Shown here: piece after piece, positions 4,707-14,310 of the stretch
Layout of the letters: every line of letters starts with the position of its first letter
How positions within the stretch are numbered: position 1 is the stretch's first letter
Sequence record: NC_019401.1
Reading direction: 5' to 3' (one strand)
DNA length: 64,000 nucleotides
Translations under genes and position numbers: made by a program
Notes under the pieces: generated by a model
Told to the model about the DNA's origin: nothing
Databases searched by the model: none
Seen by the model: only the letters and a program-made list of their open reading frames with translations

Positions 4707-5055
4707 TGATATTCGTGATCCTCAAAAGTACTTGACTGCTGAACAAGCTGAAGGTATTGTATGGCTCAAAGAATGGTGGGAAGCAAAACGTTTTTTGATT
4801 GAACATTCTTCTGAAATTGAAGTAATTCATTTCGATCATTATATGGATGAACCAACTTTAACTGGTACTGATCTGTTTATGATGGTTGCGGGTGATTGCA
4901 TGTGGGGTGATAAAGAACATTGGCCTAATGTGAAAACCATTTATCTTCATTCTTCGGATGAAGACCATATTGAAGAATTGATGGAAAACTATGCAGAACC
5001 TATGCATAAGGCTGGTGTAGAAGTTATCAATAATAGTCAGAGGAATAATTACTGA
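4690..5055 (+). CDS. cyclic-phosphate-processing receiver (cREC-like) domain protein, copy 1
   Basis: MKVYIDDIR...W...IHFDHYM...TGTD pattern; start moved to ATG 4690 (GAGG RBS). Confidence 0.7.
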   Translation: MKVYIDDIRDPQKYLTAEQAEGIVWLKEWWEAKRFLIEHSSEIEVIHFDHYMDEPTLTGTDLFMMVAGDCMWGDKEHWPNVKTIYLHSSDEDHIEELMENYAEPMHKAGVEVINNSQRNNY

Positions 5056-10129: not shown

Positions 10130-10549
10130 ATGGCAAAAATTATTTGTGGTTTTCCTGGAATTGGAAAAAGTACTGTAGTAAAAAATGACAGTACTGTAAT
10201 TGATTTAGATAGTGCAGCGTATAGTAAGATTAAAACTTTCCCGTTGAATTATCTAACAGCTATTCTGCAAGCTGAAGCAGATGGTTATGAGTACATACTT
10301 ATCAGTACTCACAATTCAGTAAGAAATATGTTAAAAAACATGGGTATGAAATATACTAATGTTTATCCTGAAATTGATTTGGGTGAAGAATATATCGATC
10401 GATATAGAGAACGTGGTTCTCCAGAATCTTTTATTAACTTCCTTGAAGAAAATTGGGATGATTTTATTTTTGAGTTGCAGTATGATGAATCAGATTATAT
10501 TGAACTTGAGCCAGGTCAATTCCTTTCAGATGTGATTAAAAATATTTGA
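10130..10549 (+). CDS. P-loop nucleotide-kinase-like protein
   Basis: N-terminal Walker A GFPGIGKST followed by DLDS. Confidence 0.75.
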   Translation: MAKIICGFPGIGKSTVVKNDSTVIDLDSAAYSKIKTFPLNYLTAILQAEADGYEYILISTHNSVRNMLKNMGMKYTNVYPEIDLGEEYIDRYRERGSPESFINFLEENWDDFIFELQYDESDYIELEPGQFLSDVIKNI

Positions 10550-10556
10550 AAATAAA

Positions 10557-10585
10557 TGAAACGATAAAAATTTTTGTGGTATAAT
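10557..10585 (+). promoter_or_regulatory. TGAAAC-N17-TATAAT promoter (RNA-gene class)
   Basis: TGAAAC 10557-62; TGTGG-TATAAT 10575-85. Confidence 0.75.
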
Positions 10586-10602
10586 ATAGGACATAAGGCA
10601 TC

Positions 10603-10722
10603 GGAATCTTACAGCAAAAATAATTAATTTTTGATGAAAACAAAACGACGGCGGTTCGAATCCCCACCCACGATTTGCCTTATTTAAAGTGGGAGCATGG
10701 TGCTGGATAAACAAGAGATTCC
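10603..10722 (+). ncRNA. ACAGCAA element, permuted tRNA-like form
   Basis: GGAATCT/AGATTCC outer helix, ACAGCAA, T-loop GGTTCGAATCC, CCCAC/GTGGG acceptor-like helix. Confidence 0.75.
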
Positions 10723-10745
10723 AGATTTTAATTAAGCGATTAGTT

Positions 10746-11282
10746 ATGAACATATACAAAATTGCAAAAGAATTGATGAATAAGCACAATCTACAGGATT
10801 GGTCTTTCGAAATTTATGAAAGTTCAAATAAGCGTGTTCCTGGAACAACCAATACAATTGGAATGTGCATCTATCATGAAAAAGTTATCGCCATTTTAGA
10901 AGCGGTTGCTTATAGTCGTAGTGAAGAATATGTTCGTAGTTTAATATTGCATGAAATTGCACATGCATTAGCTGGTCATGAAAATGGTCATAATGAAGTA
11001 TGGCAGAAAATTGCAATAGAAATTGGTTCTAAACATATCACATCATGTGCAAACATGATTGAGTTTTTAAACCATAAAAATACAATCCGCAATTGTACTC
11101 ATCCGTATGTTTGGAAATTTATGAAGTATTTTTCAAATACTGATGAGTTAGTATTCAACTTAAACCGTATACACGGTAAAAGTACACAGTACTGGTATAA
11201 TGAATATCTAAGGATTTTAAAGTTTCAGGAACGTTTAAAAAAACGTAAAAAAATTGAAACGAATCAAAAATTTGTGGTATAA
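10746..11282 (+). CDS. SprT-like zinc metalloprotease
   Basis: LILHEIAHAL...GHNEVWQKIA (HExxH plus GH..W); start moved to ATG 10746. Confidence 0.8.
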   Translation: MNIYKIAKELMNKHNLQDWSFEIYESSNKRVPGTTNTIGMCIYHEKVIAILEAVAYSRSEEYVRSLILHEIAHALAGHENGHNEVWQKIAIEIGSKHITSCANMIEFLNHKNTIRNCTHPYVWKFMKYFSNTDELVFNLNRIHGKSTQYWYNEYLRILKFQERLKKRKKIETNQKFVV

Positions 11283-11283
11283 T
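11255..11283 (+). promoter_or_regulatory. TGAAAC-N17-TATAAT promoter (RNA-gene class)
   Basis: TGAAAC 11255-60; TGTGG-TATAAT to 11283. Confidence 0.75.
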
Positions 11284-11300
11284 AAAAGTATTAGCAACAC

Positions 11301-11418
11301 GAAATCTTACAGCAAACAATATCTTATATTTTTTATGCGAAAAAAACGATGTGGTTCGAATCCACAACAACCATGTTGCTATGTTGGTTGTGCATGGGGC
11401 TAGAAAACAACAGATTTC
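11301..11418 (+). ncRNA. ACAGCAA element, permuted tRNA-like form
   Basis: GAAATCT/AGATTTC helix; ACAGCAA; TGTGG-TTCGAAT-CCACA; ACAACCA/TGGTTGT. Confidence 0.75.
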
Positions 11419-11604
11419 AGTTCTTTAATTAAGACAAATAGGACAACGGTAATGACCGCAGAAGAAAATTTAGAAATCCTTAGCAAAATTCTTGATGGAA
11501 TTAGTAATGGTAAATTAAATGAAGTAATGTCCGAATTAGGTTTTGACGTATCCAAAAGTACAGATAAAAGTACCGAATGGGTAAACAAAAACCAATAACA
11601 ATTA

Positions 11605-11771: not shown

Positions 11772-11878
11772 AAGAATCGCACAGCAAACATAAATCTTAT
11801 ATATTTCATTTGGCGAAAAACACCTTCGGTTCAATTCCGATTTACCACTGGTTGTGGGGATAGAAAAACACGATTCTT
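11772..11878 (+). ncRNA. ACAGCAA element with Gln-like anticodon arm and T arm (permuted)
   Basis: AAGAATCG/CGATTCTT; TTTC-ATTTGGC-GAAA; TCGG-TTCAATT-CCGA. Confidence 0.7.
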
Positions 11879-11905
11879 GTTTTTAATTTAGAAAATAAAA
11901 TGACG

Positions 11906-12207: not shown

Positions 12208-12330
12208 GGGAAAGTAGCTCAGTTGGTAGAGCAGGTAAGAAAACCCAAATTACTGTATTGTAATTTCACAGCAACCATACTTCATCCACTTTTAATGGCC
12301 TGGTCGTTGGTTCAAATCCAACCTTTCCCA
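12208..12330 (+). tRNA. tRNA-Lys(TTT) interrupted by a 50-nt insertion (12236-12285) at position 28/29
   Basis: GGGAAAG/CTTTCCC; GCTC/GAGC; AGG|insert|CCA-CTTTTAA-TGG-CCT; GTTGG-TTCAAAT-CCAAC. Confidence 0.85.
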
Positions 12331-14192: not shown

Positions 14193-14310
14193 GTATTAAT
14201 TAAATCTACAAGAGCATACGTATATTGATTCAATAAGCTATAGACTTTATACGATGGGTAGCAGATGGCTTATCATCTGTCGGTAGTTACGCTGCGGCTA
14301 CCAACAAATT

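What the first reader, a model, noticed from the sequence alone, without database searches (positions are those of the whole stretch)
10593..11418. Covarying leader-to-acceptor-loop pairing in the two promoter-proximal permuted elements
SEEN: in element 10603 the 5' leader ATAAGGCA (10593-10600) is the exact complement of TGCCTTAT (10676-10683), in the loop joining the acceptor-like strands. In element 11301 the leader TAGCAACA (11292-99) is the exact complement of TGTTGCTA (11374-81), at the equivalent position. The sequences differ but the 8-bp pairing is the same. INFERENCE: a pseudoknot or conformational switch that guides processing of the acceptor loop or replaces the 5' acceptor strand.
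Basis: seen in the sequence. Interest (0 to 1): 0.7.

Follow-up and report, generated by a model that had tools for sequence, protein, structure and literature searches.

The report
Self-capping knot in phage tRNA mimics
Two small tRNA-shaped RNAs of the jumbo phage GAP32 tuck their first eight or nine bases into the loop that seals their "acceptor" end, and relatives keep this pairing through matching changes, so it is a real RNA knot that probably locks the loop and hides the RNA's 5' end.

Summary
ATAAGGCA (10593-10600) is the exact complement of TGCCTTAT (10676-10683), and TAGCAACA (11292-11299) of TGTTGCTA (11374-11381). Chance gives about 1 in 1000 per element. The window is Cronobacter phage GAP32.

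Both elements (E1, E2) are paralogous tRNA-like RNAs. Each has a terminal stem plus ACAGCAA, a T arm, a sealed acceptor hairpin and a mini D arm. Each sits behind its own TGTGGTATAAT promoter, so the leader is the first few bases of the transcript.

In 7 E1 and 10 E2 variants from related phages and metagenomes the helix is always present (6-9 bp). E1 shows A-U/G-C/G.U exchange at a ninth pair. E2 shows U-A to A-U, C-G to U.G and A-U to G.U changes. G.U pairs mean the pairing acts in RNA of the + strand.

The E2 linkers (0-1 and 1-3 nt) allow only a compact H-type pseudoknot stacked on the acceptor stem. "Replaces the 5' acceptor strand" is not supported.

I read it as a structural cap that closes an oversized acceptor loop and buries the 5' end. 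That function is inferred, and a role as a processing guide is not excluded.

25 other phage elements of the same family show no such pairing once base composition is controlled.

The parts
10556..10585 (+). E1 promoter: ATGAAA, 18 nt, TATAAT, with TG (TGTGGTATAAT 10575-10585). Predicted start at 10591-10593.
   Evidence: conserved in all relatives
10593..10600 (+). E1 leader strand ATAAGGCA. Position 10601 forms a ninth pair in relatives.
10603..10617 (+). E1 terminal-stem 5' strand GGAATCTT, followed by the family motif ACAGCAA (10611-10617).
10650..10666 (+). E1 T arm, with the tRNA-type T loop TTCGAAT at 10655-10661.
10667..10693 (+). E1 sealed acceptor hairpin: CCCAC, a 17-nt loop, GTGGG. 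The loop strand TGCCTTAT lies at 10676-10683.
10715..10736 (+). E1 terminal-stem 3' strand GAGATTCC (10715-10722) and the conserved 3' tail TTTTAATTAAG (10726-10736).
11254..11283 (+). E2 promoter: TTGAAA, 18 nt, TATAAT, with TG. Predicted start at A11290.
   Evidence: two contigs of an RNA library begin at 11290
11292..11299 (+). E2 leader strand TAGCAACA.
11301..11315 (+). E2 terminal-stem 5' strand GAAATCT, followed by ACAGCAA (11309-11315).
11350..11366 (+). E2 T arm: TGTGG, TTCGAAT, CCACA.
   Evidence: pair 66/78 GC:4 CG:3 UA:2
11367..11391 (+). E2 sealed acceptor hairpin: ACAACCA, an 11-nt loop, TGGTTGT. The loop strand TGTTGCTA lies at 11374-11381.
11412..11433 (+). E2 terminal-stem 3' strand AGATTTC (11412-11418) and the 3' tail TTTAATTAAG (11424-11433).

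Best explanation
E1 (about 10591-10736) and E2 (about 11290-11433) are paralogous, promoter-driven, non-decoding tRNA mimics. Reading 5' to 3', each has a terminal-stem strand with ACAGCAA, a variable hairpin, a T arm, an acceptor hairpin closed by a loop, a mini D arm and the other terminal-stem strand.

In both, the first 8-9 transcribed bases pair with the acceptor loop. This makes an H-type pseudoknot. In E2, and probably in E1, the helix stacks on the acceptor stem on the side of its 5' strand. The short 5' linker crosses the deep groove, and the RNA's own 5' end comes to lie against the end of the 3' acceptor strand.

Shown: the complementarity, its maintenance through compensatory and wobble changes, its fixed position, and its steric feasibility.

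Inferred: the helix is a permanent cap. It would close a loop that would otherwise be long and single-stranded. It would occupy the place where a free NCCA tail and an RNase P cleavage site would be. It would also base-pair the 5' terminus. Together these would keep the mimic sealed, so that it is neither opened nor CCA-tailed, and would protect it from nucleases that need single-stranded RNA or a free 5' end.
For: Exact 8-bp complements at equivalent places in two paralogues whose helix sequences differ at 6 of 8 positions. Chance is about 1e-3 each.

E1 orthologues: 8 invariant pairs set between loop linkers that vary in length (3-6 and 5-7 nt) and sequence. The ninth pair reads AU:3, GC:3, U.U:1. 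It reads G.U in two metagenome variants (one search run X17; L258).

E2: 6-9 bp in all 10 variants. Changes seen are U-A to A-U at the first pair, C-G to U.G, A-U to G.U, and a 1-2 nt slide of register in Eneladusvirus that still gives 8-9 bp. G.U pairs work only in RNA of the + strand.

Geometry: E2 linkers are 0-1 nt and 1-3 nt. In ideal A-form RNA the deep-groove crossing of 6-8 bp needs 10-16 A. The other route needs 26-34 A. So one defined compact topology fits.

The scaffold does not use these strands. Its energy is unchanged when both are forced single (-27.1 and -22.4 kcal/mol). The duplexes are worth -8 to -12 kcal/mol.

The predicted starts lie 0-2 nt before the helix. Two contigs of an RNA library begin at 11290.

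The other sealed elements of this window that I read are closed tightly. E3 at 11773 has a 5-nt loop, 15469 has a 7-bp stem with a TTCG loop, and 14063 has a self-paired loop. E1 and E2 are the only ones I found whose acceptor loops are long and not self-paired, and the only ones with a complementary leader.

Precedent that such loops can be attacked: the M. smegmatis YrlA acceptor loop is cut by RNase P and CCA-tailed (PMC4201824, read).
Against: There are no structure-probing or end-mapping data, so the function is inferred only.

Most helix pairs never vary among orthologues. Formal covariation therefore rests on the end pairs and on the E1/E2 comparison.

The tight link (1-4 nt) from the leader to the terminal stem is hard to reconcile with a canonical L-shape in which all helices form at once. 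Either the terminal stem folds back or the helix is not permanent.

The eighth E2 pair is lost in three relatives, and one relative keeps only 6 bp.

A cap could be had more cheaply with a tetraloop, as in sister elements. The long loop plus leader may therefore serve something else.
Confidence: 0.5

Rival explanations
1. Processing guide. The helix exists only in the precursor. It pairs two segments that are both to be removed, the 5' leader and the loop spacer. This would present the loop to RNase P, or build a roughly 20-bp coaxial stack for RNase III. The acceptor end would then be opened and CCA-tailed, as in M. smegmatis YrlA.
For: M. smegmatis YrlA is cut in the acceptor loop by RNase P and CCA-tailed in vivo (PMC4201824). 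In other phages 10 of 66 family members carry NCCA directly after the 3' acceptor strand, which suggests that loops are opened there. T arm, acceptor and helix stack to 20-21 bp.
Against: E1 and E2 encode no CCA after the acceptor stem. Paired leaders and trailers usually hinder RNase P (established knowledge, not tested here). The helix letters are more conserved than the linkers around them, which is unusual for discarded spacer. An RNA-library contig runs uncut across the E2 loop, 11340-11438; DNA carry-over cannot be excluded.
Confidence: 0.2
2. Folding guide or conformational switch. The leader catches the loop as soon as the loop is transcribed, before the 5' acceptor strand and the 3' terminal-stem strand exist. 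The helix either steers folding or alternates with the tRNA-like fold.
For: Order of synthesis (sequence). A nested fold containing the helix is nearly as stable as the minimum-energy fold: -22.1 vs -22.4 kcal/mol in E2 and -23.4 vs -27.8 kcal/mol in E1. The 1-4 nt tether to the terminal stem strains a canonical L-shape.
Against: None of the six strands overlaps another, so nothing forces an exchange. No second, mutually exclusive conserved pairing was found for the leader or the loop.
Confidence: 0.15
3. Cis-mask. The loop sequence acts in trans by pairing with another RNA, and the leader keeps it covered until it is removed.
For: The helix letters are invariant over two phage genera. The E2 loop GUUGCU is also complementary to AGCAAC, which overlaps the family motif ACAGCAA(C) found in sister elements at 12268 and 16207.
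Against: The E1 loop has no such match. No target was identified. 5-6 nt matches are weak.
Confidence: 0.08
4. Chance, or a DNA-level inverted repeat such as a protein operator.
For: Inverted repeats of 8 bp occur by chance in AT-rich DNA.
Against: Joint chance is about 1e-6. The sequences differ between E1 and E2 yet stay complementary. G.U wobble variants would be C.A mismatches on the other strand. Linker lengths vary while the pairing stays.
Confidence: 0.02

Closest known systems
YrlA-type bacterial Y RNAs: tRNA-like module with a closed 'acceptor' stem-loop (Chen et al. 2014, PMC4201824; Wang et al. 2018, bioRxiv 10.1101/312249)
   Same: The order of parts is the same: 5' stem strand, variable arm, T arm, acceptor stem-loop, D arm, 3' stem strand. 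Both have a tRNA-type T loop. Both have an acceptor end closed by a loop. In M. smegmatis that loop can be opened by RNase P.
   Different: No TROVE/Ro60 gene was found in GAP32. The Ro60 motif GNCGAAN0-1G is absent, and ACAGCAA stands there instead. No Rfam model matches. The word 'pseudoknot' does not occur in the 2014 paper, so no leader-to-loop pseudoknot is described there.
Viral tRNA-like structures with an acceptor-arm pseudoknot (TYMV type; from general knowledge)
   Same: A pseudoknot forms part of, or extends, the acceptor arm of a tRNA mimic and stacks coaxially with the T arm.
   Different: In TYMV the knot creates a free, chargeable 3' CCA end. Here it seals the end, uses the RNA's 5' terminus, and there is no CCA.
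Circularly permuted tRNA genes of red algae and archaea (PMC3978253, PMC3218864; abstracts only) and two-piece tmRNA genes (from general knowledge)
   Same: [quoted passage not shown]
   Different: No bulge-helix-bulge motif, no anticodon arm and no CCA are present in E1 or E2. There is no evidence for circularisation.
Classical H-type pseudoknots and loop-loop 'kissing' helices (from general knowledge)
   Same: A hairpin loop pairs with a distant single strand. A helix of 6-8 bp is bridged by linkers of 0-2 nt across the deep groove.
   Different: The long connecting 'loop 1' here contains a whole T arm, a variable hairpin and one strand of another helix.

Membership tests
YrlA / bacterial Y RNA | Encoded beside a Ro60 (TROVE) gene and bound by that protein | tested here: not met
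   The PF05731 six-frame search found nothing in GAP32, which is 99% complete. It also found nothing in five other phage records that carry ACAGCAA elements. Binding itself cannot be tested with these tools.
YrlA / bacterial Y RNA | Ro60-binding motif GNCGAAN0-1G in the 5' strand (PMC4201824) | tested here: not met
   E1 has CAUCGGAAUCU and E2 has CACGAAAUCU. Both lack the flanking Gs, and the Yersinia phage Yen9-04 has UGAAAUCU.
YrlA / bacterial Y RNA | Order of variable arm, T arm, closed acceptor stem-loop and D arm between the two strands of a terminal stem | tested here: met
   Folds and alignments. The T stem and acceptor stem covary.
YrlA / bacterial Y RNA | Match to a curated covariance model | tested here: not met
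   No Rfam family matched at gathering score over the whole window. At E<=10 over 10540-11460 only chance-level hits appeared.
Circularly permuted tRNA gene | 3' half upstream of the 5' half, with the acceptor strands joined by a linker | tested here: met
Circularly permuted tRNA gene | A complete tRNA body with an anticodon arm, and a CCA end that is encoded or can be added | tested here: not met
   The hairpin after ACAGCAA has a 6-8 nt loop of variable size and no U33. No NCCA follows the acceptor stem.
H-type RNA pseudoknot | Two helices with crossing strands, both supported by comparative data | tested here: met
   The leader-loop helix crosses the acceptor and terminal stems. Pairing is maintained in 17 variants with compensatory and wobble changes.
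H-type RNA pseudoknot | Linker lengths sterically sufficient | tested here: met
   E2 linkers of 0-1 and 1-3 nt compare with a deep-groove distance of 10-16 A for 6-8 bp. Helices of 9 bp would need fraying of an end pair.
H-type RNA pseudoknot | Forms in the RNA in solution or in the cell | not testable with these tools
   This needs chemical probing or a solved structure.

The most novel reading that the evidence does not exclude
The knot may be an anti-processing lock that turns a tRNA-derived RNA into an inert, long-lived decoy. By placing its own 5' end where the NCCA tail belongs, the RNA could still be recognised by tRNA-binding enzymes through its elbow and acceptor/T stack. Candidates are RNase P, the CCA-adding enzyme, modification enzymes and host tRNA-cleaving defence nucleases. 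None of them could cut, tail or charge it, so the phage would titrate such factors.
Probability: 0.12. Interest if true: 0.75.

Novelty: new variant of a known kind. Interest (0 to 1): 0.5.

Why it matters
Jumbo phages of the GAP32 group carry more than a dozen small RNAs built from tRNA parts, and their role is unknown. This work shows that two of them have evolved a specific, conserved way to seal the acceptor end with their own 5' terminus.

That says they are meant to stay closed. They are mimics, not tRNAs waiting to be matured. It also gives a clean handle for experiments, because disruptive and compensatory mutations of an 8-bp helix can test stability, processing and function.

It would add a second solution to the known acceptor-arm pseudoknot of plant-virus tRNA-like structures. 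In those the knot opens the end for charging. Here it would close the end.

Tried and rejected
1. Generality. I looked for the pairing in the wider ACAGCAA family, using 25 non-redundant IMG/VR elements with acceptor loops of 9-25 nt. A permutation across phages looked significant (p = 2e-4). A composition-controlled shuffle of each element's own leader did not (Fisher p = 0.44, only 1 of 25 below 0.05). I therefore reject generality. The first signal was a base-composition artefact.

2. Known families. Rfam gave no YrlA or other family.

3. Ro60 partnership. The TROVE domain is absent from GAP32 and from five other records.

4. 3D test.

5. E1-specific scan of viral contigs (CCCACGA...GTGGGAGC). 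It returned almost only chance hits in GC-rich phages.

6. Metagenome scan. It yielded only one relevant contig, L258.

7. Public runs. They are contigs, not reads, so they give sequence variants and one suggestive 5' end but no processing map.

8. Alternative partners. I looked for a leader partner in the 3' tail or a longer terminal stem. Only a non-conserved 3-bp extension was found.

9. MAFFT alignment of the E2 leader. It puts the Eneladusvirus leaders out of register, so under-counts helix 1. I counted that helix without a fixed register.

Full report
IDENTITY OF THE WINDOW. The window is the right-hand 64 kb of Cronobacter phage vB_CsaM_GAP32, a 358,663-bp jumbo myovirus of genus Mimasvirus. 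The E2 stretch is 100% identical to JN882285, and the window's own record has the same length. The region is a tRNA-gene field with 18 ARAGORN tRNAs and 19 Rfam tRNA hits. Interspersed are small elements that share a short stem followed by ACAGCAA.

THE OBSERVATION. Neither can be extended in GAP32.

Each element has the same build:
- an extended -10 promoter (TGTGGTATAAT; 10/12 and 11/12 matches with an 18-nt spacer);
- a leader of about 10 nt;
- a terminal stem (GGAATCTT/GAGATTCC in E1, GAAATCT/AGATTTC in E2), whose 5' strand is followed directly by ACAGCAA;
- a variable hairpin;
- a canonical T arm (GGTTCGAATCC);
- an acceptor-like hairpin whose two strands are joined by a loop of 17 nt (E1) or 11 nt (E2);
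- a mini D arm containing GG;
- the 3' strand of the terminal stem;
- a conserved tail TTTAATTAAG.

The leader strand is the 5'-most part of the transcript. The -10 hexamers end at 10585 and 11283, which puts the starts at about 10591-10593 and 11289-11291. In one metatranscriptomic run, two contigs begin exactly at 11290. This is weak support, because DNA carry-over cannot be excluded.

The chance of an 8-bp perfect match between a 14-nt leader and the loop is 6-7e-4 with local composition, or 1.5-1.8e-3 with the loop's own letters shuffled.

COMPARATIVE EVIDENCE. Only Mimasvirus and Eneladusvirus phages have these two elements. That is 18 GenBank records, a few IMG/VR contigs and one metagenome contig.

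E1, seven distinct sequences (alignment A1):
- The eight pairs never vary.
- The flanking loop linkers change in length (3-6 and 5-7 nt) and in sequence.
- A ninth pair reads U.U in GAP32, A-U in CBB, BF and Yen9-04, and G-C in XbC2, Kaldavass and L245 (AU:3 GC:3 other:1).
- In two metagenome variants the ninth pair is G.U (run X17: 10601 T>G without the loop insertion, L258).

E2, nine distinct sequences plus L258 (register-free count):
- TAGCAACA/TGTTGCTA, 8 bp: GAP32, CBB, XbC2.
- TAGCAAC/GTTGCTA, 7 bp: Kaldavass, L245.
- AAAGCAAC/GTTGCTTT, 8 bp: BF.
- AAAAGCAAC/GTTGCTTTT, 9 bp: Yen9-04.
- GAAGCAATA/TGTTGCTTT, 9 bp with two G.U: L249.
- AGCAAC/GTTGCT, 6 bp: L022.
- TAGCAACG/TGTTGCTA, with the eighth pair G.U: L258.

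So the first pair changes from U-A to A-U, a C-G becomes U.G, and an A-U becomes G.U. In Eneladusvirus the helix slides by 1-2 nt and is still 8-9 bp. A fixed-column count under-rates this helix because MAFFT did not gap the leader.

The scaffold helices covary as expected. The T-stem pair reads GC:4 CG:3 UA:2 and the acceptor pair reads GC:5 AU:2 UA:2.

E1 and E2 are paralogues that include their promoters. Their helices differ at six of eight positions, and all six differences are compensated. G.U pairs and the strand asymmetry argue for an RNA helix on the + strand and against a DNA-level repeat.

In Eneladusvirus E2 is not promoter-proximal. About 115 nt of another structured element, with a T arm, precede it. 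The helix is kept there and begins 1-3 nt after that element's last strand. The pairing is therefore tied to the 5' boundary of E2, not to the promoter as such.

TOPOLOGY AND STERICS. The order of strands is: leader, terminal-stem 5' strand, T arm, 3' acceptor strand, loop strand, 5' acceptor strand, terminal-stem 3' strand. The leader-loop helix therefore crosses both the acceptor stem and the terminal stem. With the acceptor stem it forms a classical H-type pseudoknot.

In E2 the linkers are 0-1 nt (acceptor 3' strand to helix) and 1-3 nt (helix to acceptor 5' strand). On ideal A-form coordinates the cross-strand phosphate distance is 10.0-16.3 A for 6-8 bp across the deep groove. It is 25.7-33.6 A the other way. 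Only one arrangement fits. The loop strand stacks onto the 5' acceptor strand, and the short 5' linker crosses the deep groove. The leader continues the 3' acceptor strand across a nick. The RNA's 5' terminus then lies where a discriminator and CCA tail would start.

This gives a coaxial stack of T arm (5 bp), acceptor (6-7 bp) and new helix (6-9 bp). Helices of 9 bp probably fray at one end. The eighth GAP32 pair is the one lost in three relatives.

The tether of 1-4 nt between the leader and the terminal stem cannot be satisfied in a canonical L-shape with a rigid 'anticodon-like' arm. Either the terminal stem folds back along the extended acceptor arm, or the helices are not all present at once. 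The junctions on both sides of that stem are long and unpaired (ACAGCAA... and GAUAAACAA), which would allow a fold-back.

ENERGETICS. The duplexes are worth -7.9 to -11.7 kcal/mol. The scaffold keeps its full energy when both strands are forced single (-27.1 and -22.4 kcal/mol), so the helix is an add-on and not a competitor. A purely nested fold that contains the helix is 4.4 kcal/mol (E1) or 0.3 kcal/mol (E2) above the minimum. A transient or alternative state is therefore thermodynamically possible. During transcription the loop strand appears before the 5' acceptor strand, so the leader-loop helix can form first without displacing anything.

WHAT IT IS NOT.
- No Rfam family matches. The only weak hits are to Dictyostelium Class I RNA, through the shared decamer CUUACAGCAA.
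- The elements have the YrlA order of parts (PMC4201824). They lack the Ro60 motif.
- GAP32 has no detectable TROVE protein. Neither do five other phage records that carry ACAGCAA elements. I therefore do not file E1 and E2 as Y RNAs, although other notes of this scan read the family that way.
- They are not decoding tRNAs. The hairpin after ACAGCAA has a loop of 6-8 nt that changes in size between relatives, and no CCA follows the acceptor stem.

IS THE PAIRING GENERAL? A scan of IMG/VR for ACAGCAA followed by a T loop gave many sealed, permuted tRNA-like elements. Ten of 66 non-redundant ones carry NCCA right after the 3' acceptor strand. Some are complete permuted tRNAs, for example L029 with a D arm and a GUU anticodon loop.

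Among the 25 with loops of 9-25 nt, leader-loop complementarity looked enriched when leaders were swapped between phages (p = 2e-4). The enrichment vanished when each leader was shuffled in place (Fisher p = 0.44). The pairing is therefore a speciality of the E1/E2 lineage.

MECHANISM. In the sister elements of GAP32 that I read, the acceptor end is closed tightly. E3 has a 5-nt loop, 15469 has a 7-bp stem with a TTCG loop, and 14063 has a self-paired loop. E1 and E2 are the only elements I found with long acceptor loops that are not self-paired, and they close them with the leader.

The M. smegmatis precedent shows that a 7-bp acceptor hairpin of this RNA type can be opened by RNase P and CCA-tailed. 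I therefore favour a permanent cap, at about 0.5. It would fill the loop, occupy the tail position, stack on the cleavage site, and pair the 5' terminus. In E. coli a paired 5' terminus is known to slow 5'-end-dependent decay (general knowledge, not tested here).

The rivals are a precursor-only processing guide (0.2), a folding guide or switch (0.15), a cis-mask of a trans-acting loop (0.08) and chance (0.02). None of these can be separated without end mapping and probing.

VERDICT. The pairing is real and maintained by evolution (I put this part at about 0.85). The function is inferred. It is a new structural variant within phage tRNA-mimic RNAs, of moderate interest.

Noticed in passing
window 10605-10677 and 11303-11352: The decamer CUUACAGCAA next to the terminal stem is identical to the conserved motif of Dictyostelium Class I RNAs. 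Rfam RF01414 gives weak hits (E 0.54 and 7.5). Both RNA kinds have a short terminal stem followed by this motif. It may be chance or convergence.
   Followed up: no
window 10726-10736, 11424-11433, 11884-11894, 14197-14207: Each ACAGCAA element I looked at is followed, 2-6 nt after its terminal stem, by a conserved AT-rich tail (TTTAATTAAG or a close variant). This may be a shared 3' processing or binding site.
   Followed up: no
L029 (minus strand, about 4850-5050), L020, L035, L052, L077, L113, L117: In unrelated IMG/VR phages, many ACAGCAA elements are complete circularly permuted tRNAs. NCCA follows the 3' acceptor strand directly, then a short spacer and the 5' strand. L029 has a full D arm and a GUU (Asn) anticodon loop. 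This suggests that loops are opened there to give a free CCA end.
   Followed up: partly
whole GAP32 record and five IMG/VR records (L029, L020, L094, L083, L035): No TROVE (Ro60) domain was found by six-frame HMM search. Three of the six records are at least 99% complete. The Ro60-partner reading of the ACAGCAA family is therefore not supported for these phages by this test.
   Followed up: partly
window 11292-11299 compared with 11309-11315, 12268 and 16207: The E2 leader (UAGCAAC) resembles the family motif ACAGCAA(C). The E2 loop GUUGCU could thus also pair with that motif in cis or in sister RNAs (5-6 bp).
   Followed up: no
L003 2709-2845 (Serratia phage BF); the same in Yen9-04, L022 and L249: An unannotated element of about 115 nt lies between E1 and E2 in Eneladusvirus. 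It is promoter-driven and ends in a T arm plus a 7-nt strand. ARAGORN does not call it a tRNA.
   Followed up: no
window 10747-11282: The SprT-like ORF between E1 and E2 is present in GAP32 and absent in CBB, XbC2, Kaldavass and several metagenome relatives, where E1 is followed directly by the E2 promoter. It is a recent insertion or loss between the paralogues.
   Followed up: partly
window 11452-11598: A 48-codon ORF with a good ribosome-binding site follows E2 and precedes tRNA-Glu in every relative with annotation. It is not enriched in Glu or Tyr, so it does not look like a leader-peptide attenuator.
   Followed up: no
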